Sequence record: MT028491.1
DNA: 64,000 nucleotides
Strand: one strand, 5' to 3'
Shown here: in pieces, positions 16,995 to 34,126 of the stretch
How the letters are laid out: the number at the start of each line of letters is the position of its first letter
How positions within the stretch are numbered: position 1 is the stretch's first letter
The notes under the pieces: generated by a model
Databases searched by the model: none
Told to the model about the DNA's origin: nothing
Seen by the model: only the letters and a program-made list of their open reading frames with translations
Program-made: the position numbers and the translations under genes

Positions 16995-17077
16995 TGGTGC
17001 GCTCTGCCGGAATCGAACCGGCACTCCGAAGAACTAGATTTTGAGACTAGCGTGTCTACCAATTCCACCAAGAGCGC
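16995..17077 (-). tRNA. tRNA-Leu(CAA)
   Basis: GCGCTCT acceptor, CT-CAA-AA loop, long variable arm, TTCGATT T-loop, A73-CCA. Confidence 0.93.
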
Positions 17078-17099
17078 TTAGATAATGTTTTGACACGAT

Positions 17100-17172
17100 T
17101 GACAACAACAGGGATCGAACCCATACATATCGTTTATCATACGACCGTTCTACCACATTAAACTATATCATC
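17100..17172 (-). pseudogene. degenerate tRNA-Ile(GAT)-like element inside a 22-bp inverted repeat
   Basis: D-like TAGTTTAATGTGGTAGAAC, anticodon arm GTCGT-ATGATAA-ACGAT, GGGTTCGATCCC T-arm; G:U-rich acceptor; no CCA. Confidence 0.6.
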
Positions 17173-17194
17173 AATCGTGGCAAAACATTATCAG

Positions 17195-17554
17195 TCAAGC
17201 ATCAATTGATATCATGCCTATAATTTTACCTGACAAGATCAACAATTGATTACAGGCATCATCATAATTCATATCAGCATATGTGTCTATCTTAAATTGT
17301 AGTTTCAATTCTTCTTGTGACAATTTCAAATATTCACAAATTAAACGTTCTGGAATACGCTGTTTCCTAATAAATTCGCCAAGATTGATTAATTCTCTTG
17401 ACAAACGGGAAAGTTGTTCTGCCCTTTCTGGATCATCTGGATAAAGGTCATTCCAAACTGTGTTATACCTTGCTTTAAACTTATAAAGTTTAAATGGCCT
17501 GACAGTCTGACCACTTGCAGATTGCAATGGTGTATAAACATTATTCCATTTCAT
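17195..17554 (-). CDS. hypothetical protein
   Basis: 119-aa ORF between tRNAs. Confidence 0.65.
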   Translation of the reverse strand: MKWNNVYTPLQSASGQTVRPFKLYKFKARYNTVWNDLYPDDPERAEQLSRLSRELINLGEFIRKQRIPERLICEYLKLSQEELKLQFKIDTYADMNYDDACNQLLILSGKIIGMISIDA

Positions 17555-17574
17555 ACTTTACCCCTTAACGAAAC

Positions 17575-17649
17575 TGGTCCTGATAGGTGGATTTGAACCA
17601 CCGCTATCTGCTCCACAAACAGATGTGCTAACCACTACACTATATCAGA
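17575..17649 (-). tRNA. tRNA-His(GTG), no G-1, A73
   Basis: TCTGT-TT-GTG-GA-GCAGA arm; TTCAAAT T-loop; ACCA end. Confidence 0.9.
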
Positions 17650-17650
17650 G

Positions 17651-17722
17651 CGCGCCGCCGGGGATTCGAACCCCGACTAACGGTTTTGGAGACCGTTGTG
17701 CTAACCGTTACACCAACGACAC
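17651..17722 (-). tRNA. tRNA-Trp(CCA), 3' CCA not encoded
   Basis: ACGGT-CT-CCA-AA-ACCGT arm, G73; 1 nt from tRNA-His. Confidence 0.88.
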
Positions 17723-17740
17723 ATTGTTTCATTGTAGTTC

Positions 17741-17748
17741 TATTTATA
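17741..17748 (-). promoter_or_regulatory. T4-like late promoter
   Basis: TATAAATA 19 nt upstream of tRNA-Trp. Confidence 0.6.
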
Positions 17749-17754
17749 ACAAAA

Positions 17755-18147
17755 CTACTTCTTTTTTACAAGACTCTTATCAAATTCAATTCGCCTATGT
17801 TCATCTTCGATAAAGATATTGAATGGCTTGTGAGTCTTTGCGAAATTCTCGCTACCAATATGTTGAGCCGCAATCTGATAGTATGCATTTTCAAATGCAC
17901 GATCTACCGCAATTGGACCGGGCTTGGTATCTGCTACAGCTTCCAAGGTAATTCGCTGGAACCATCCAAGGGCAATCTGCAAAGCCATATCTTCGTCTTC
18001 CATGACTTCATCAGCGCCGAAACTGTCATTTAGTTTGCGAAGGATGACTTCTTTGATTTCTGCATAATGCGCATCGGCAATCTTTTCCAATCGCGCAATA
18101 GCTTGCTCATTTAAAATGCGTTCTTCTTCTGGAATTTCATCCATCAC
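17755..18147 (-). CDS. hypothetical protein
   Basis: 130-aa ORF. Confidence 0.7.
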   Translation of the reverse strand: MMDEIPEEERILNEQAIARLEKIADAHYAEIKEVILRKLNDSFGADEVMEDEDMALQIALGWFQRITLEAVADTKPGPIAVDRAFENAYYQIAAQHIGSENFAKTHKPFNIFIEDEHRRIEFDKSLVKKK

Positions 18148-18167
18148 AAACCCTTTCTAATCACCAA

Positions 18168-18557
18168 TCAAAGGCTCTTGAAAATTTCCGTAGCCTTCTT
18201 ACCGTCATACTGATTTGGATAGGTTGCCTTCATGTACTTCATGAAATCGCCCATCGTCATCGTTTTGAACGTTTCTGCAACTGCCAAAATTTCATCATCA
18301 GAAAGCATCTTTGGGAGATACTTTTCCAATGCTTCAATTTCACCAGCCAAATCATCACTTGGCTTGAGTGTATAGGTTTCCTGCCAATTCTTATGAAGAG
18401 ATTTCAGAATAGTAACAACAGACGAATCATCAGACTGTTTATCCTTATCCAACTTGCGTTCAATTTCGCCAATAATTGTCTGATAAGTTACACCAAGACG
18501 ATGACCAATCTTTCGGGCTTCGTCACGATGTACTTTAATCTTCTCATAAATTGTCAT
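18168..18557 (-). CDS. GatB/YqeY domain protein
   Basis: YQTIIGEIERK...DDSSVVTILKS...EIEALEKYLPKMLSDDEI pattern. Confidence 0.75.
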   Translation of the reverse strand: MTIYEKIKVHRDEARKIGHRLGVTYQTIIGEIERKLDKDKQSDDSSVVTILKSLHKNWQETYTLKPSDDLAGEIEALEKYLPKMLSDDEILAVAETFKTMTMGDFMKYMKATYPNQYDGKKATEIFKSL

Positions 18558-18742
18558 ACCACATACTCCAATAGCTTGCGTTCATTATAAACTTCCGTTG
18601 CTTCACGATAAGCAACCATTTCCCAAGGTAATGTAGCAAGTTCCTCAATCTCTTGTTGCAACTTGTCCATGGGCATGGTCTTATAACCATTGATACGCGC
18701 TTCGCGCTCCCAAGGTCTTTCTTGATCCATTACACTACCCAT
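18554..18742 (-). CDS. hypothetical protein
   Basis: 62-aa ORF. Confidence 0.55.
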   Translation of the reverse strand: MGSVMDQERPWEREARINGYKTMPMDKLQQEIEELATLPWEMVAYREATEVYNERKLLEYVV

Positions 18743-32069: not shown

Positions 32070-32081
32070 ATATTACTAAAC

Positions 32082-32158
32082 TGGTTGCGGTATTACGAAT
32101 CGAACGTAACTCTCATGGCATATGAAACCAGAATGGTCAACCTGACCACCTTACCGCG
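32082..32158 (-). tRNA. initiator tRNA-fMet(CAT)
   Basis: C1:A72 mismatch, CGCGG.../...CCGCAACCA, TT-CAT-AT loop. Confidence 0.85.
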
Positions 32159-32159
32159 A

Positions 32160-32559
32160 TAAACTAACTTCCACAGACATCCTTGCTATGTTGTCAACAT
32201 GGCTTTAAACCGGACTCTATCTGTTTGTGTAGATGAAAAACATACCCCTATTCTATAAGGGCATTGGTATAAACATCCCAACTGTTAGCCTACGTGTAAT
32301 GGGGAATGTTGACTAAACATCGCGATCATTACACTCTACTTTATTCTTTTCGATCCATTCAAGGGCATTTGCAACTGCTAACTTGAATTCCATGTTTATC
32401 ATGCGATGCTTGTTGCAATATACTTATTGAACAGAGGCAGGACCGGACATTATTTTAGAGTCGCTACAAAGCGCCTCTTATAATCAGGCGACTTAGTATT
32501 ATAACCCCTAAGTCAAGGGAAGACGTGCGTGTCAATGAAGGGCTGCACATCCTGTCTCA
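32160..32559 (-). ncRNA. candidate ~400-nt structured ncRNA between tRNA-Val and tRNA-fMet
   Basis: ORF-free; several 7-8 bp helices plus long-range GACTCTA/TAGAGTC. Confidence 0.5.
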
Positions 32560-32635
32560 TGGTAGGTGTTGAAGGATTTGAACCTTCGCATGGTGGCATG
32601 TAAAACCACTGCCTTAACCACTTGGCGAAACACCT
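32560..32635 (-). tRNA. tRNA-Val(TAC)
   Basis: GTGGT-TT-TAC-AT-GCCAC arm; D-arm resembles Gln/His type; ACCA. Confidence 0.85.
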
Positions 32636-32642
32636 ATAAATT

Positions 32643-32718
32643 TGGCTGGAAAGGCGGGCTTCGATCCCGCAACCTTCCGGTTAACAGCCGGATGCTCTAC
32701 CAGTTGAGCTACTCTCCA
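32643..32718 (-). tRNA. tRNA-Asn(GTT)
   Basis: TCCGG-CT-GTT-AA-CCGGA arm, G73-CCA. Confidence 0.92.
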
Positions 32719-32929
32719 AAATTCGCTATGGTTTTTGACAATGCCGAACACCACCAAACGGCACCCATATTCGAAGTTAGGCAAACGTATCTGAATGCTT
32801 CACCTTCATGGGTATAGAATTAGGTTGCCAATTTCTTTTACTGTCATTGGCGAGGAAACAGTTGTTAACTTATCTGAAAATCGTGTTCTCTATATATGAT
32901 ATTCCAGAATTGGTCAACTATTTATATTA

Positions 32930-33555
32930 GTTACTAGCACAGTCTCGCGAAGCTTTGACCCTATGTAGTAGATTTGTTTAGTCTTAGTTTAGTCTAGTTT
33001 TGTATAATACTAAAATCAGGATAGCTTTTCGATGTTATGCAAAAACAGTTTTTGGTTGCTGCTTCTATCCTAAAGTTCATTGCGTATTGCAATGATGAAA
33101 CGACTTACCGGAATACCGGTTCCAGCTAGTTACGAGGCTGTTAATCTCGCTTGATTTTGGATAGGATCAAGAATAACCTAACTTTTATTTAATAGAAATG
33201 GGAAATGTTAAACCCACCTTGGCATCCAGCTTCAAAGTCCGAAGACTCCACTGTGTTGCTCTCTCTATGATTTTAATCTTTAGAGTTTGCAGCGTGCATT
33301 CCAATTTCTTAATGTTGGTAACTTCAAATCAATCCGAAGATATTCTTTCCAAAGGCCATCCCATTAAGAAACGCAAGTCGTTTCATCATTGCAATATTTC
33401 AGGAAGCATTTCGGCTTGTTTTTTTCAAATAAAAATGCTTGTTAGGTTTGCTGTTAGCTTCCTAATATTGCCAATTTAATAAAACTACTGGAAACATTTG
33501 AGTGTTTATAACCGAAACTTTTTGAGTTGCTGTTAGTTTCCAAAAACGTTTTATC
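32930..33555 (-). ncRNA. candidate large structured ncRNA / leader of the tRNA operon
   Basis: perfect 22-bp helix 33085-33106/33375-33396 with nested stems; directly downstream of tandem promoters; no credible ORF. Confidence 0.55.
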
Positions 33556-33559
33556 AAAC

Positions 33560-33597
33560 TATTTATATATTCTATTCTCTATTTAGTATAAAGTCAA
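33560..33597 (-). promoter_or_regulatory. tandem sigma70-type and late promoters for the RNA array
   Basis: TTGACT-N17-TAGAAT (33569-33597) followed by TATAAATA (33560-33567). Confidence 0.8.
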
Positions 33598-33856
33598 CAA
33601 CTTTTTTTAACTTTTTACTATTTTTTTTGTTTATTTTTACGGAAAGCATTTTGGTTTGTATTTGGAAACAAATTTTTTATGTTTGCTGTTAGCTTTCCAA
33701 AGCTTGTTAGGTGGACTCCCATCTGCAAAGGGGCATCTTGGGGGGCTTTGATGTTTTGCAGACAGGAGTCCTCACTGATATCTAACCTTTCGGTTATCAA
33801 TCAGCTTGAAAGAAACCTTCAATTTAGAAGAACTCTTTAAAACTGATTATGTTTAG

Positions 33857-33885
33857 ATATTAACTCGATTCGATTTGAAAGTCAA
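33857..33885 (-). promoter_or_regulatory. sigma70-type promoter
   Basis: TTGACT-N17-TAATAT with upstream A-tract. Confidence 0.75.
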
Positions 33886-34036
33886 CATCTTTTTTAGTGA
33901 GAACCGAAAGAATTTTTAGTACCACTCATACTATAGTTCTTCCGGTTCTCTTTGACATGATCATTCGTACATTCTCACGTCAACGCTTACGGTATAGACC
34001 GGACAAAGTGATTCGTCAACTGGTCTTTTTAGAAAA

Positions 34037-34126
34037 TGGCGCGCTTGGAGAGACTCGAACTCCCATTGATGCTATCGCCTCCAATTACGGTTACTAAGGG
34101 GTAGAAACCCTGACCGGTACAAGCGC
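34037..34126 (-). tRNA. D-armless tRNA-like RNA, probable TCT (Arg) anticodon
   Basis: GCGCTTG/CAAGCGC-G-CCA acceptor, GGGAG-TTCGAGT-CTCTC T-arm, AGGG-TTTCTAC-CCCT hairpin; no D-arm. Confidence 0.75.

What the first reader, a model, noticed from the sequence alone, without database searches (positions are those of the whole stretch)
16995..34126. tRNA super-operon interleaved with a suite of unannotated structured RNAs: candidate phage RNA-based translation-takeover / anti-defence system
Seen: about 28 tRNA or tRNA-like genes covering all 20 amino acids, all on the minus strand. Between them lie at least six ORF-free structured segments (24514-24741, 26050-26193, 28267-28437, 30754-30948, 31834-31977, 32160-32559), plus 32930-33555, each with long helices; where wobbles occur they read as G:U on the minus strand. 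Three tRNA mimics (17100, 27120, 34037) also occur. Established: T4 carries two tRNA-like ncRNAs of unknown function in its tRNA cluster, and phage tRNAs can offset host anticodon nucleases. Inference: the array is processed by host RNase P and 3' trimming into a coordinated set of tRNAs plus novel ncRNAs that act on translation or defence.
Basis: partly seen in the sequence, partly recalled or inferred. Interest (0 to 1): 0.85.

Follow-up and report, generated by a model that had tools for sequence, protein, structure and literature searches.

The report
Phage tRNA array with odd tRNA-likes
This is the tRNA gene region of a published jumbo phage of Ochrobactrum; most of the "structured RNAs" between the tRNAs look like ordinary hairpins, processing stems or tRNA relics, but one is a conserved, oddly built tRNA-like RNA that may read the phage's favourite arginine codon.

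Summary
The window is Ochrobactrum phage vB_OspM_OC (MT028491, T4-like, 227 kb). There are 28 tRNA or tRNA-like genes, all on the minus strand, and they cover all 20 amino acids. That is more than the 24 tRNAs and 17 amino acids in the published description: Asp, Phe and Tyr were missed.

It is not one operon. A 6.5-kb protein-gene block, internal terminators, several promoter-like sites and two HNH endonuclease genes interrupt it.

The ORF-free segments are mixed:
- 24500-24746 and 32159-32559 fold no better than background.
- Several others match ordinary intergenic hairpins found elsewhere in this phage.
- The strong signals of 30745-30951 and 33085-33396 come only from 22-bp closing helices; their interiors fold like shuffled sequence.

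Two things stand out. First, the element at 34038-34128 belongs to a conserved family found in five other phage tRNA arrays. It shows seven compensatory base pairs, a nearly absent D arm and an invariant anticodon-like loop reading UCU. AGA is the phage's most-used Arg codon, and no standard tRNA-Arg(UCU) was found. Second, 19-23-bp leader-trailer helices recur around tRNAs or tRNA-like units in three phages, probably as double-strand RNA processing stems.

No relatives exist to test the other segments. A coordinated anti-defence RNA system is not supported.

The parts
16995..17077 (-). tRNA-Leu(CAA)
   Evidence: ARAGORN; Rfam 57 bits
17081..17192 (-). tRNA-Ile(GAT)-like (17099-17173) enclosed by a 22-nt leader-trailer inverted repeat (17081-17102 / 17171-17192, 21 of 22 paired); second Ile(GAT) copy with a wobble-rich acceptor stem
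   Evidence: 52.5 bits; leader-trailer duplex -34.3 kcal/mol against a median of -12.4 for 91 tRNAs
17575..17649 (-). tRNA-His(GTG), A73, no encoded G-1
17650..17722 (-). tRNA-Trp(CCA)
17741..17748 (-). TATAAATA motif just upstream of tRNA-Trp (possible T4-type late promoter)
   Evidence: all six copies in the window are intergenic and co-oriented with the downstream genes
17755..24277 (-). block of 11 protein genes that interrupts the array (YqeY-like, glutathionylspermidine synthase family, SprT-like, tail spike and others)
   Evidence: GenBank annotation; Pfam
24298..24333 (-). 16-bp hairpin plus T-run: intrinsic terminator-like site directly after tRNA-Pro
24337..24413 (-). tRNA-Pro(TGG)
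24420..24507 (-). unannotated tRNA-Tyr(GTA): good anticodon arm, 6-bp D stem with tetraloop, 8-bp acceptor plus 4-bp T stem, but 8 nt between acceptor and D stem
   Evidence: (26.4 bits, below threshold); read from the sequence
24508..24746 (-). spacer S1, not structured beyond chance
   Evidence: z -0.3 on both strands
24747..24822 (-). unannotated tRNA-Phe(GAA)
   Evidence: Rfam 39.6 bits; ARAGORN
25784..26042 (-). tRNA-Gln(TTG) 25784-25857, tRNA-Lys(TTT) 25883-25960, tRNA-Ile(GAT) 25966-26042
26043..26197 (-). spacer S2, moderately structured, within the range of ordinary intergenic gaps
   Evidence: z -3.2; control
26946..27112 (-). tRNA-Met(CAT) 26946-27023, tRNA-Lys(CTT) 27034-27112
27120..27216 (-). 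degenerate paralogue of the Tyr tRNA: intact acceptor and D stems, aberrant anticodon arm and T loop
   Evidence: (76% identical to the 3' part of Tyr)
27223..27381 (-). tRNA-Ala(TGC) 27223-27298, tRNA-Arg(ACG) 27305-27381
27493..28188 (+). HNH endonuclease gene on the opposite strand
28191..28264 (-). tRNA-Thr(TGT)
28265..28441 (-). spacer S3: a 13-bp-closed two-hairpin domain (28350-28441, weakly tRNA-Arg-like), then two hairpins with unrelated stems but the same loop motif CCUCCUUUCAA (28283-28293, 28323-28333)
   Evidence: z -8.3; hairpins z -8.7
28442..28516 (-). tRNA-Cys(GCA)
29535..29607 (-). unannotated tRNA-Asp(GTC)
   Evidence: Rfam 49.1 bits; ARAGORN
29608..29723 (-). spacer S4: two hairpins, the second terminator-like (29632-29658)
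   Evidence: (z -4.2)
29724..30099 (-). tRNA-Glu(TTC) 29724-29799, small gene 29803-29997, tRNA-Leu(TAG) 30017-30099
30109..30642 (-). HNH endonuclease gene
   Evidence: Pfam HNH_3, E 2.5e-13
30669..30744 (-). tRNA-Gly(TCC)
30751..30951 (-). spacer S5: 22-bp closing helix (30751-30772 / 30930-30951; 20 Watson-Crick plus 2 G:U on the minus strand) around a 157-nt interior that folds no better than shuffles. The interior holds a tRNA-Val-like T arm (exact T-loop motif at 30845-30855) and a weak mini-tRNA match at 30834-30891
   Evidence: (18 bits)
30952..31029 (-). tRNA-Leu(TAA) with a short variable region
31733..31823 (-). tRNA-Ser(GCT) with an 8-bp acceptor, 4-bp T stem and 6-bp D stem
   Evidence: read from the sequence; class described in PMC5389517
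31824..31978 (-). spacer S6: 9-11-bp closing helix, exact T-loop motif at 31845-31855, 10 G:U pairs on the minus strand against 1 on the plus strand
   Evidence: (z -4.0)
31979..32158 (-). tRNA-Ser(TGA) 31979-32069, tRNA-Met(CAT) 32082-32158
32159..32559 (-). spacer S7, 401 nt, not structured beyond background; unassigned
   Evidence: z -2.3; small ORFs without SD or family
32560..32718 (-). tRNA-Val(TAC) 32560-32635, tRNA-Asn(GTT) 32643-32718
32719..34037 (-). 1.3-kb region without credible genes upstream of the main tRNA block. It holds promoter-like sites (TTGAC-N17/18-TAnnnT at 33569-33597 and 33857-33885; TATAAATA at 32919-32926 and 33560-33567) and minus-strand-specific hairpins at 33790-34037
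   Evidence: z -5.2 and -5.5 on minus against -1.9 and 0.0 on plus
33085..33396 (-). 312-nt unit closed by a perfect 22-bp helix (33085-33106 / 33375-33396); the interior folds like shuffled sequence
33018..33698 (-). four copies of a 52-63-nt unit (33641-33698, 33490-33541, 33401-33463, 33018-33071): conserved motif CUAACAGCAA in three copies (diverged in the fourth), flanked by 6-7-nt arms that differ between copies yet stay complementary
   Evidence: (11 matches to the motif, three of them exact, against 3.5 expected)
34038..34128 (-). conserved non-canonical tRNA-like RNA: 7-bp acceptor, 5-bp T arm, G73, encoded CCA, D arm almost absent, invariant 7-nt loop with UCU in the anticodon position, 28-nt insertion in the variable region

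Best explanation
This is the tRNA-rich, fast-evolving region of a T4-like jumbo phage. It is a mosaic rather than one system.

**Shown**
- There are 25 standard tRNA genes and 3 aberrant tRNA-like genes, interleaved with orphan genes and two HNH endonuclease genes.
- The element at 34038-34128 is a real, conserved RNA gene of a new tRNA-like family.
- Three units are each enclosed by a 22-bp helix formed by their flanks: the Ile-like tRNA at 17081-17192, 30751-30951 and 33085-33396. The same design occurs in two other phage tRNA arrays.
- The remaining hairpins resemble the terminator-plus-promoter modules found between ordinary genes of this phage.

**Inferred**
- Transcripts start at several early-type and late-type promoters. 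Host RNase P and 3' trimming enzymes cut them at tRNA ends, and a double-strand-specific RNase (RNase III type) cuts them at the long helices. This releases the tRNAs and excises the enclosed units.
- The tRNA set mainly serves the phage's AT-rich codon usage in a GC-rich host. It may also buffer against loss of host tRNAs.
- The 34038-34128 RNA most likely supplies the missing reader of AGA.
- The tRNA-like pieces inside the spacers at 30751-30951, 31824-31978, 28350-28441 and 27120-27216 are diverged duplicates of tRNA genes. Whether they act on their own is unknown.
For: **Identity and context.** The window is 100% identical to MT028491. The record's annotation and the paper describe T4-like structural and late-transcription genes (PMC7139368).

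**tRNA set.**

**The 34038-34128 element.**
- Five homologues exist in phage tRNA arrays: Sinorhizobium phage Phosso, one metagenome contig and three IMG/VR contigs. None was found in 185,579 bacterial genomes with two exact patterns.
- 99.3% of cells are paired and 7 pairs show compensatory changes, against 0 in all slid controls.
- A covariance model separates the six members (115-121 bits) from all ordinary tRNAs (34 bits or less).
- Rfam's tRNA model places UCU at the anticodon.
- AGA is the commonest Arg codon in the window (32%).
- The 24 annotated tRNAs and my scans give only Arg(ACG).

**Long helices.**
- The only three inverted repeats of 20 nt or more with at least 90% complementarity in 64 kb lie in the tRNA region, and each is 22 nt.
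- By my estimate, about 0.004 such repeats are expected by chance per window.
- Leader-trailer duplex energy is -34.3 kcal/mol for the OC Ile-like tRNA and -34.0 for a canonical Phosso tRNA-Thr. The median for 91 tRNAs is -12.4.
- Across seven such helices, G:U against A:C on the transcribed strand is 7 to 1.

**Ordinary hairpins.** Other intergenic gaps reach z -3.5 to -6.7 and show a terminator hairpin followed by TTGAC. This is the architecture described as PeSLs in T4-like phages (PMC4122927).

**tRNA descent of spacer parts.** Exact T-loop motifs occur in two spacers. One spacer has an 81% match to the tRNA-Val T arm and an 18-bit tRNA match. The Tyr paralogue is shown.
Against: - No transcript data exist, so promoters, cleavage sites and stable products are all inferred.
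- RNase III cleavage has no sequence signature that I could test.
- The UCU element lacks a normal D arm. Its anticodon stem has only four secure pairs and its second arm is poorly supported. It may therefore not work on the ribosome at all.
- The single compensatory pair in the anticodon-like hairpin may reflect one evolutionary event.
- Two hairpins at 28265-28349 share a loop motif but have unrelated stems. The four repeat units at 33018-33698 have co-varying arms. Both patterns look selected, and a plain promoter or terminator role does not explain them.
- Record bases 1-24000 of the phage genome were not read.
Confidence: 0.55

Rival explanations
1. One reading: the spacers encode a coordinated suite of novel stable ncRNAs. 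They would be released by tRNA-processing enzymes and would act on translation or against host defence, for example as decoys for tRNA-targeting nucleases.
For: - Structure favours the minus strand in several spacers.
- T-arm motifs lie inside two spacers.
- Paralogous hairpins have conserved loops and different stems.
- Four repeat units have co-varying arms.
- T4 has two unexplained small RNAs in its tRNA region (PMC3014915).
- Elsewhere the phage carries a T4-type tRNA repair set (RNA ligase 1, polynucleotide kinase and phosphatase) and an Acb1-like protein, so it does invest in counter-defence.
Against: - Two of the seven segments are unstructured, and the interiors of the largest ones fold like shuffles.
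- Ordinary intergenic gaps score the same.
- There is no Rfam family.
- There are no paralogues elsewhere in the genome.
- No homologues exist anywhere, so there is no covariation evidence.
- Nothing ties any segment to a defence system.
Confidence: 0.15
2. The spacers have no RNA function. They would be decaying tRNA duplicates and recombination scars, left by homing endonucleases and by promoter/terminator-mediated shuffling in a hyperplastic region. The inverted repeats would be relics of insertions (MITE-like).
For: - Two HNH genes sit inside the array.
- Degenerate paralogues of Tyr and Ile tRNAs and tRNA-Val-like fragments are present.
- The interiors are unstructured.
- The region's genes are orphans.
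- PeSL-mediated shuffling is documented in T4-like phages (PMC4122927).
Against: - Three independent 22-nt repeats of different sequence, each bracketing a unit in a tRNA array, and the same design around a fully canonical tRNA in another phage, argue for selection.
- Mismatches are G:U on the transcribed strand 7 to 1.
- The repeats are not a repeated family, as MITEs would be.
Confidence: 0.2
3. One or more long-stem units, above all 30751-30951, are Y-RNA-like partners of the phage's Ro60-like protein. They would be built as a long stem plus a tRNA-like module.
For: - The record annotates p153 (record 105819-107222) as Ro sixty-related.
- No Y RNA was found near it or elsewhere.
- The unit has a long closing stem, and a T-arm hairpin is followed by two further hairpins. 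This is the order described for YrlA (PMC4201824).
Against: - The Rfam YrlA model gives no match even in a 221-nt search at E up to 10.
- The GNCGAA-type motif near the 5' end is absent (read from the sequence).
- The unit lies about 48 kb from the gene, not within 4 kb.
- Pfam assigns p153 to DUF2828 and DUF7788, not to TROVE.
Confidence: 0.05
4. The 1.3-kb region 32719-34037 works at the DNA level. The four repeat units would be binding sites for a regulator or replication initiator (iterons), and the hairpins would be incidental.
For: - It has direct repeats with a conserved core, AT-rich stretches and several promoter-like sites.
- It is the largest gene-free stretch in the window.
Against: - There is no GC-skew turn here.
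- Hairpin stability is strongly specific to the minus strand at 33790-34037.
- The arms of the repeat units keep complementarity across 40-50 nt, which a simple iteron does not need.
Confidence: 0.1

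Closest known systems
tRNA gene region of phage T4 and other T4-like phages (tRNA cluster with small RNAs RNAC/RNAD and the SegB homing endonuclease)
   Same: - Both are clusters of phage tRNA genes transcribed with non-coding RNAs of unknown role (PMC3014915, PMC9697503).
- Both have a free-standing homing endonuclease inside the cluster (cited in PMC3014915).
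- Both phages have a T4-like virion and late-transcription genes.
- From my own memory, not checked here: T4 species 1 RNA is an RNase III substrate in vitro.
   Different: - This array is far larger (28 against 8 tRNAs), is dispersed over 17 kb with protein genes, and covers all 20 amino acids.
- No sequence similarity to any T4-type record was found beyond the tRNAs.
Non-canonical bacterial and phage tRNAs with 8/4 acceptor/T stems and tRNA-Sec-like D arms (allo-tRNAs; Mukai et al. 2017, PMC5389517)
   Same: - That paper reports irregular tRNAs, including 8/4 tRNA-Ser, in tRNA clusters of alpha-proteobacterial phages.
- Here tRNA-Ser(GCT) 31733-31823 shows the 8/4 layout with a 6-bp D stem, and the Tyr gene a similar one (read from the sequence).
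- The UCU element shares G73 and a long extra arm.
   Different: - The UCU element has a normal 7/5 acceptor/T layout and virtually no D arm, which is not the allo-tRNA design.
- Its sequence could not be compared with theirs, because no supplementary files are held.
D-arm-lacking mitochondrial tRNAs of animals (e.g. tRNA-Ser for AGN codons)
   Same: Both have acceptor, anticodon and T arms with the D arm replaced by a few nucleotides. The anticodon reads AGR/AGN codons (general knowledge; PMC9427863 treats the human case).
   Different: - The known cases are mitochondrial, short, and served by adapted synthetases and factors.
- This one is a phage gene and carries a 28-nt extra arm.
- Its use in translation is untested.
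Promoter-early stem-loop (PeSL) modules of T4-like phages
   Same: A terminator-like hairpin lies next to an early-type promoter between small orphan genes in hyperplastic regions (PMC4122927). This is seen here at several gaps.
   Different: - PeSLs are a conserved repeated motif within a genome, whereas here the hairpins are unique in sequence.
- The 22-bp helices enclosing 68-268 nt are not PeSLs.
Bacterial Y RNAs (YrlA, Rfam RF02553)
   Same: Both have a long stem formed by the two ends plus a tRNA-like module with a T arm. The phage also encodes a protein annotated as Ro60-related (PMC4201824).
   Different: - There is no match to the family model.
- The 5' motif is absent.
- The unit is not near the protein gene.
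- The protein is not a TROVE-domain match.

Membership tests
tRNA (Rfam RF00005), for 34038-34128 | Score at or above the family's gathering threshold (29 bits) | tested here: met
   31.6 bits, full-length match. This is marginal: ordinary tRNAs of this phage score 40-74 bits.
tRNA (Rfam RF00005), for 34038-34128 | Four-arm cloverleaf with a D arm (3-4-bp stem and a loop of 7 or more) | tested here: not met
   The model aligns the D arm to CCGG with an empty loop. RNAalifold finds no D arm.
tRNA (Rfam RF00005), for 34038-34128 | 7-bp acceptor stem, 5-bp T stem with a standard T loop, discriminator and CCA | tested here: met
   All are present. Five acceptor pairs and one T-stem pair are kept through compensatory changes in six sequences.
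tRNA (Rfam RF00005), for 34038-34128 | 5-bp anticodon stem with a 7-nt loop (U33, purine 37) | tested here: inconclusive
   The 7-nt loop has U at 33 and A at 37 and is invariant in six sequences. The stem has 4 secure pairs, one of them compensatory, and the fifth is non-standard.
tRNA (Rfam RF00005), for 34038-34128 | Aminoacylated and used on the ribosome | not testable with these tools
   Only indirect evidence: AGA is the top Arg codon and no other UCU tRNA was found.
YrlA / bacterial Y RNA (Rfam RF02553), for 30751-30951 | Match to the family covariance model | tested here: not met
   No YrlA match at E up to 10 in a 221-nt search. None in the window or in 140 kb of the rest of the genome.
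YrlA / bacterial Y RNA (Rfam RF02553), for 30751-30951 | GNCGAA(N)G motif near the 5' end (PMC4201824) | tested here: not met
   Absent from the 5' 40 nt of the unit (sequence).
YrlA / bacterial Y RNA (Rfam RF02553), for 30751-30951 | Within about 4 kb of a Ro60 (TROVE) gene on the same strand (PMC4201824) | tested here: not met
   The Ro-like gene lies about 48 kb away, on the same strand. Pfam gives DUF2828 and DUF7788, not TROVE.
8/4 tRNA-Ser (allo-tRNA group, PMC5389517), for 31733-31823 | 8-bp acceptor plus 4-bp T stem, long D stem with a short loop, long variable arm, G73, Ser anticodon | tested here: met
   Read from the ARAGORN sequence: 8 + 4 pairs, 6-bp D stem, GCU anticodon, G73. 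No model of that group was available to score it.
PeSL promoter-terminator modules, for the short spacer hairpins | Terminator-like stem-loop adjoining an early sigma-70-type promoter | tested here: inconclusive
   Clear at gaps outside the array (2734-2855, 16483-16590) and at 24298-24333. Inside the array only some hairpins carry T-runs or adjoin TTGAC sites.
PeSL promoter-terminator modules, for the short spacer hairpins | The same motif repeated many times in the genome | tested here: not met
   No spacer has a paralogue in 204 kb of the genome.
Large ornate phage-associated RNAs near tRNAs (GOLLD, ROOL), for 33018-33567 | Match to the Rfam models | tested here: not met
   No match at the gathering or E-value threshold. 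The interior is not more stable than shuffles.

The most novel reading that the evidence does not exclude
**UCU family.** The 34038-34128 family is a working elongator tRNA that lacks a D arm. It would be the first outside animal mitochondria. Phages of Rhizobiales-type hosts would use it to read AGA. With G73 and a long extra arm, it might be charged with an amino acid other than arginine.

**Caged units.** The 19-23-bp 'caged' tRNA and tRNA-like units are a separate, previously undescribed class of phage RNA. Their release from the helix would be a regulated step.
Probability: 0.25. Interest if true: 0.75.

Novelty: new variant of a known kind. Interest (0 to 1): 0.42.

Why it matters
- **Correction to the record.** The published description says this phage lacks tRNAs for Asp, Phe and Tyr. 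It has them, so it encodes a reader for every amino acid.
- **The UCU element.** It is a small, well-defined family with covariation support. Current annotation misses it in every genome that carries it. If it decodes AGA, it stretches the known limits of tRNA architecture in a bacterial translation system.
- **The long helices.** Helices around single tRNAs are a simple, checkable feature. They may explain how very long phage tRNA arrays are cut up.
- **Caution for similar scans.** In this phage a strongly negative fold z-score is normal for any intergenic gap, and a long closing helix can make an unstructured interior look ornate.

Tried and rejected
**Searches that found nothing useful**
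- Relatives for covariation of the spacers: megablast and blastn against 50,697 phage records found only tRNA matches.
- Protein-anchored scans of IMG/VR with two neighbouring genes found nothing.
- tblastn with two genes found nothing useful.
- A search of 5.8 billion proteins with the gene between two spacers found only itself.
- Two of the three metagenome matches to the 20-mer were chance matches inside coding sequence.
- The supplement of the allo-tRNA paper is not held.

**Readings considered and rejected**
- Group I or other introns in tRNAs: ARAGORN's intron mode gave only implausible calls and Rfam gave no intron or ribozyme match.
- tmRNA: none found.
- GOLLD, ROOL, 6S and riboswitches: no Rfam match.
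- MITE family: the inverted repeats are unique in sequence.
- Y RNA: tested and not met (see Membership tests).
- The small annotated ORFs as real genes: no families and no ribosome-binding motif.

**Weak or abandoned leads**
- The shared loop motif of the two hairpins at 28265-28349 resembles an anti-Shine-Dalgarno sequence. The motif count is not significant when one mismatch is allowed, and I could not test a target.
- A T4-type middle-promoter reading of the four repeat units was considered and dropped for lack of any test.

The 8-nt T4 late-promoter consensus was used as the pattern.
- In my reasoning only, I also typed a T4 middle-promoter box and the 3' tail of 16S rRNA. Nothing was built from them, and no letters from memory are used in this report beyond the 8-mer, which also occurs in the window.

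Full report
**Identity.** The span is 100% identical to Ochrobactrum phage vB_OspM_OC, MT028491.1. Window base 1 is record base 124001. This is a published 227,654-bp jumbo phage with T4-like virion, replication and late-transcription genes. Its paper reports 24 tRNA genes for 17 amino acids and states that Asp, Phe and Tyr are missing (PMC7139368). It mentions no non-coding RNAs.

**The tRNA set.** ARAGORN finds 22 tRNAs.
- Rfam adds Ala, Asp(GTC) at 29535-29607 (49 bits), Phe(GAA) at 24750-24822 (39.6 bits) and a tRNA-like at 34040-34126 (31.6 bits).
- Relaxed ARAGORN and direct reading add Tyr(GTA) at 24420-24507 and a degenerate paralogue at 27120-27216.
- The total is 28, all on the minus strand, and all 20 amino acids are covered.
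- The 24th annotated tRNA lies far outside the window at record 53521-53606 and is a Met. No standard tRNA-Arg(UCU) is annotated anywhere, and none turned up in the window.

**Not one operon.** Eleven protein genes, including a tail spike gene, occupy 17755-24277. A 16-bp hairpin with a T-run follows tRNA-Pro at 24298-24333. Other terminator-like hairpins lie inside the array. Two HNH endonuclease genes sit among the tRNAs, one on the opposite strand. Promoter-like sites occur at 33569-33597 and 33857-33885. The motif TATAAATA occurs six times in the window, always between genes and co-oriented with what follows. Three of the six are at 17741, 32919 and 33560, upstream of tRNA blocks.

**Are the spacers structured?** I folded each on both strands against dinucleotide shuffles.
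- The others range from -3.2 to -8.3, and 33561-34037 reaches -11.1.
- The control matters. Coding windows of this phage average -1.2 (sd 1.3). About half of the ordinary intergenic gaps outside the array reach -3.5 to -6.7. These gaps are terminator hairpins followed by TTGAC promoter-like sites, the layout described as PeSLs in T4-like phages (PMC4122927).
- After removing the closing helices, the interiors of 30745-30951, 31824-31978 and 33085-33396 fold like shuffles (z -0.2, -1.5, -0.7). These are not ornate RNAs. They are stretches bracketed by a long helix.
- Real hairpin-level signal remains at 28265-28349 (z -8.7) and 33790-34037 (z about -5 on the minus strand, about 0 to -2 on the plus strand).
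- The preference for the minus strand and the G:U excess are real but modest.
- The 14 tiny ORFs that GenBank places in the spacers have no ribosome-binding motif, and the ten scanned against Pfam have no family match.

**The conserved element at 34038-34128.** It is 92% identical to an unannotated stretch of Sinorhizobium phage Phosso, with diverged flanks.
- Exact-pattern scans found four more copies in one metagenome contig and three IMG/VR contigs, each next to tRNA genes. None was found in 185,579 bacterial genomes.
- In the six sequences the core is almost invariant. Meanwhile 5 of 7 acceptor pairs, one T-stem pair and one pair of an internal hairpin change on both sides and stay paired. 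99.3% of cells pair, and slid controls give zero compensatory pairs.
- A covariance model scores the six at 115-121 bits and every ordinary tRNA at 34 bits or below.
- Rfam's tRNA model aligns the internal hairpin as the anticodon arm. Its invariant 7-nt loop then reads UCU with U33 and A37. The D arm shrinks to four bases with no loop, and 28 nt are inserted in the variable region.
- AGA is the commonest Arg codon in the window's long ORFs (32%). The host genome has much higher G+C (PMC7139368).
- The simplest reading is an aberrant reader of AGA. A non-decoding mimic cannot be excluded.
- The library holds no report of D-arm-lacking tRNAs in phages.

**The long helices.** A scan for inverted repeats found three of exactly 22 nt, all in the tRNA region:
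- 33085-33106 with 33375-33396, 22 of 22 paired.
- 17081-17102 with 17171-17192, 21 of 22 paired.
- 30751-30772 with 30930-30951, 20 Watson-Crick pairs plus 2 G:U.

The second encloses the Ile(GAT)-like tRNA, extending its acceptor stem outwards. The design recurs elsewhere. In Phosso a fully canonical tRNA-Thr is caged the same way. Two further units there have 19-22-bp stems around 58-nt three-hairpin interiors, the length of a tRNA body. One IMG/VR array has a 23-bp example. Leader-trailer duplex energies for the two caged tRNAs are about -34 kcal/mol, against a median of -12.4 for 91 tRNAs. Across the seven helices the transition mismatches are G:U on the transcribed strand 7 times and A:C once. 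I infer double-strand RNA processing stems of the RNase III kind. This step is inference, with no sequence test available.

**tRNA descent of spacer contents.** Exact T-loop motifs lie in 30745-30951 and 31824-31978. The first also matches the tRNA-Val variable and T region at 81% and scores 18 bits as a mini-tRNA. The first domain of 28265-28441 aligns weakly with tRNA-Arg. The elements at 27120 and 17100 are second, degraded copies of Tyr and Ile genes. The array therefore grows by duplication and decay.

**Unexplained features.**
- Two adjacent hairpins at 28265-28349 have unrelated stems but the same 11-nt loop motif.
- Four 52-63-nt units at 33018-33698 carry a conserved motif (diverged in the fourth) next to 6-7-nt arms. 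The arms differ between copies yet stay complementary.
- Both patterns suggest selection. No function can be assigned.

**Y RNA idea.** The record annotates a Ro60-related protein elsewhere in the genome. This raised the idea that a long-stem unit with a T arm is its Y RNA. The family model, the 5' motif and the proximity rule all fail, and Pfam does not call the protein a TROVE protein. I keep it as a low-probability rival.

**Context.** The phage carries RNA ligase 1, polynucleotide kinase and phosphatase, an RlaP-like nucleotidyltransferase, an Acb1-like protein and an ArfA-like protein. An arms race over tRNAs is therefore plausible for this phage. Nothing connects the spacers to it.

**Limits.**
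- There are no transcript data.
- The phage has no sequenced relatives in any collection searched, so covariation could be tested for one element only.
- Record bases 1-24000 were not read.

**Verdict.** This is an ordinary, if unusually complete, phage tRNA region. It has two real curiosities: a conserved D-arm-poor tRNA-like family with a UCU loop, and caged tRNA units. The proposed RNA-based takeover or anti-defence system is not supported.

Noticed in passing
window 31733-31823: tRNA-Ser(GCT) has an 8-bp acceptor stem, a 4-bp T stem and a 6-bp D stem with a short loop. This is the irregular 8/4 layout reported for alpha-proteobacterial phage tRNA clusters (PMC5389517).
   Followed up: partly
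window 17575-17649: tRNA-His has A73 and no encoded G-1; tRNA-Trp ends on the base before it. This matches the alpha-proteobacterial type of tRNA-His, so the phage tRNA looks adapted to its host's synthetase.
   Followed up: no
window 30952-31029: tRNA-Leu(TAA) is only 78 nt long with a 5-nt variable region, unlike the long-arm Leu tRNAs at 16995 and 30017.
   Followed up: no
L013 31819-33222 (record 105819-107222), outside the window: A protein annotated as Ro sixty-related matches Pfam DUF2828 and DUF7788, not TROVE. No Y RNA was detected within 6 kb or elsewhere in the genome parts scanned.
   Followed up: partly
L013 9112-11515 and 26180-27082; L012 34894-35367; L013 1506-1703 (outside the window): The phage carries RNA ligase 1, separate polynucleotide kinase and phosphatase ORFs, an RlaP-like nucleotidyltransferase, an Acb1-like (anti-CBASS family) protein and an ArfA-like ribosome-rescue protein.
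   Followed up: partly
L014 29521-29606 (record 53521-53606), outside the window: The lone tRNA-Met(CAT) annotated outside the array is 86 nt long. It did not reach Rfam's tRNA threshold in a gathering scan, so it may be another irregular tRNA.
   Followed up: no
L011 21808-23103 (Phosso 446807-448102): Phosso also has a gene-free stretch of about 1.3 kb next to a tRNA (annotated tRNA-Pyl, anticodon CTA) in its dispersed tRNA region. It shows no sequence similarity to the 1.3-kb region of this window.
   Followed up: no
L010 8009-8094: The covariance model of the UCU family gives a 32-bit match at a place where ARAGORN calls no tRNA. This may be a further irregular tRNA-like gene in that IMG/VR array.
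   Followed up: no
window 18168-18557: The gene annotated as 'glutamyl-tRNA(Gln) amidotransferase subunit A' is a 129-aa YqeY-like protein by Pfam (E 4e-7), not a GatA. It lies between the two tRNA blocks.
   Followed up: partly
window 33581-33629 and L014 9708-9757: The promoter-like stretch upstream of the repeat units is 78% identical over 50 nt to an intergenic stretch between the tail sheath and small terminase genes. This may be a shared promoter.
   Followed up: no
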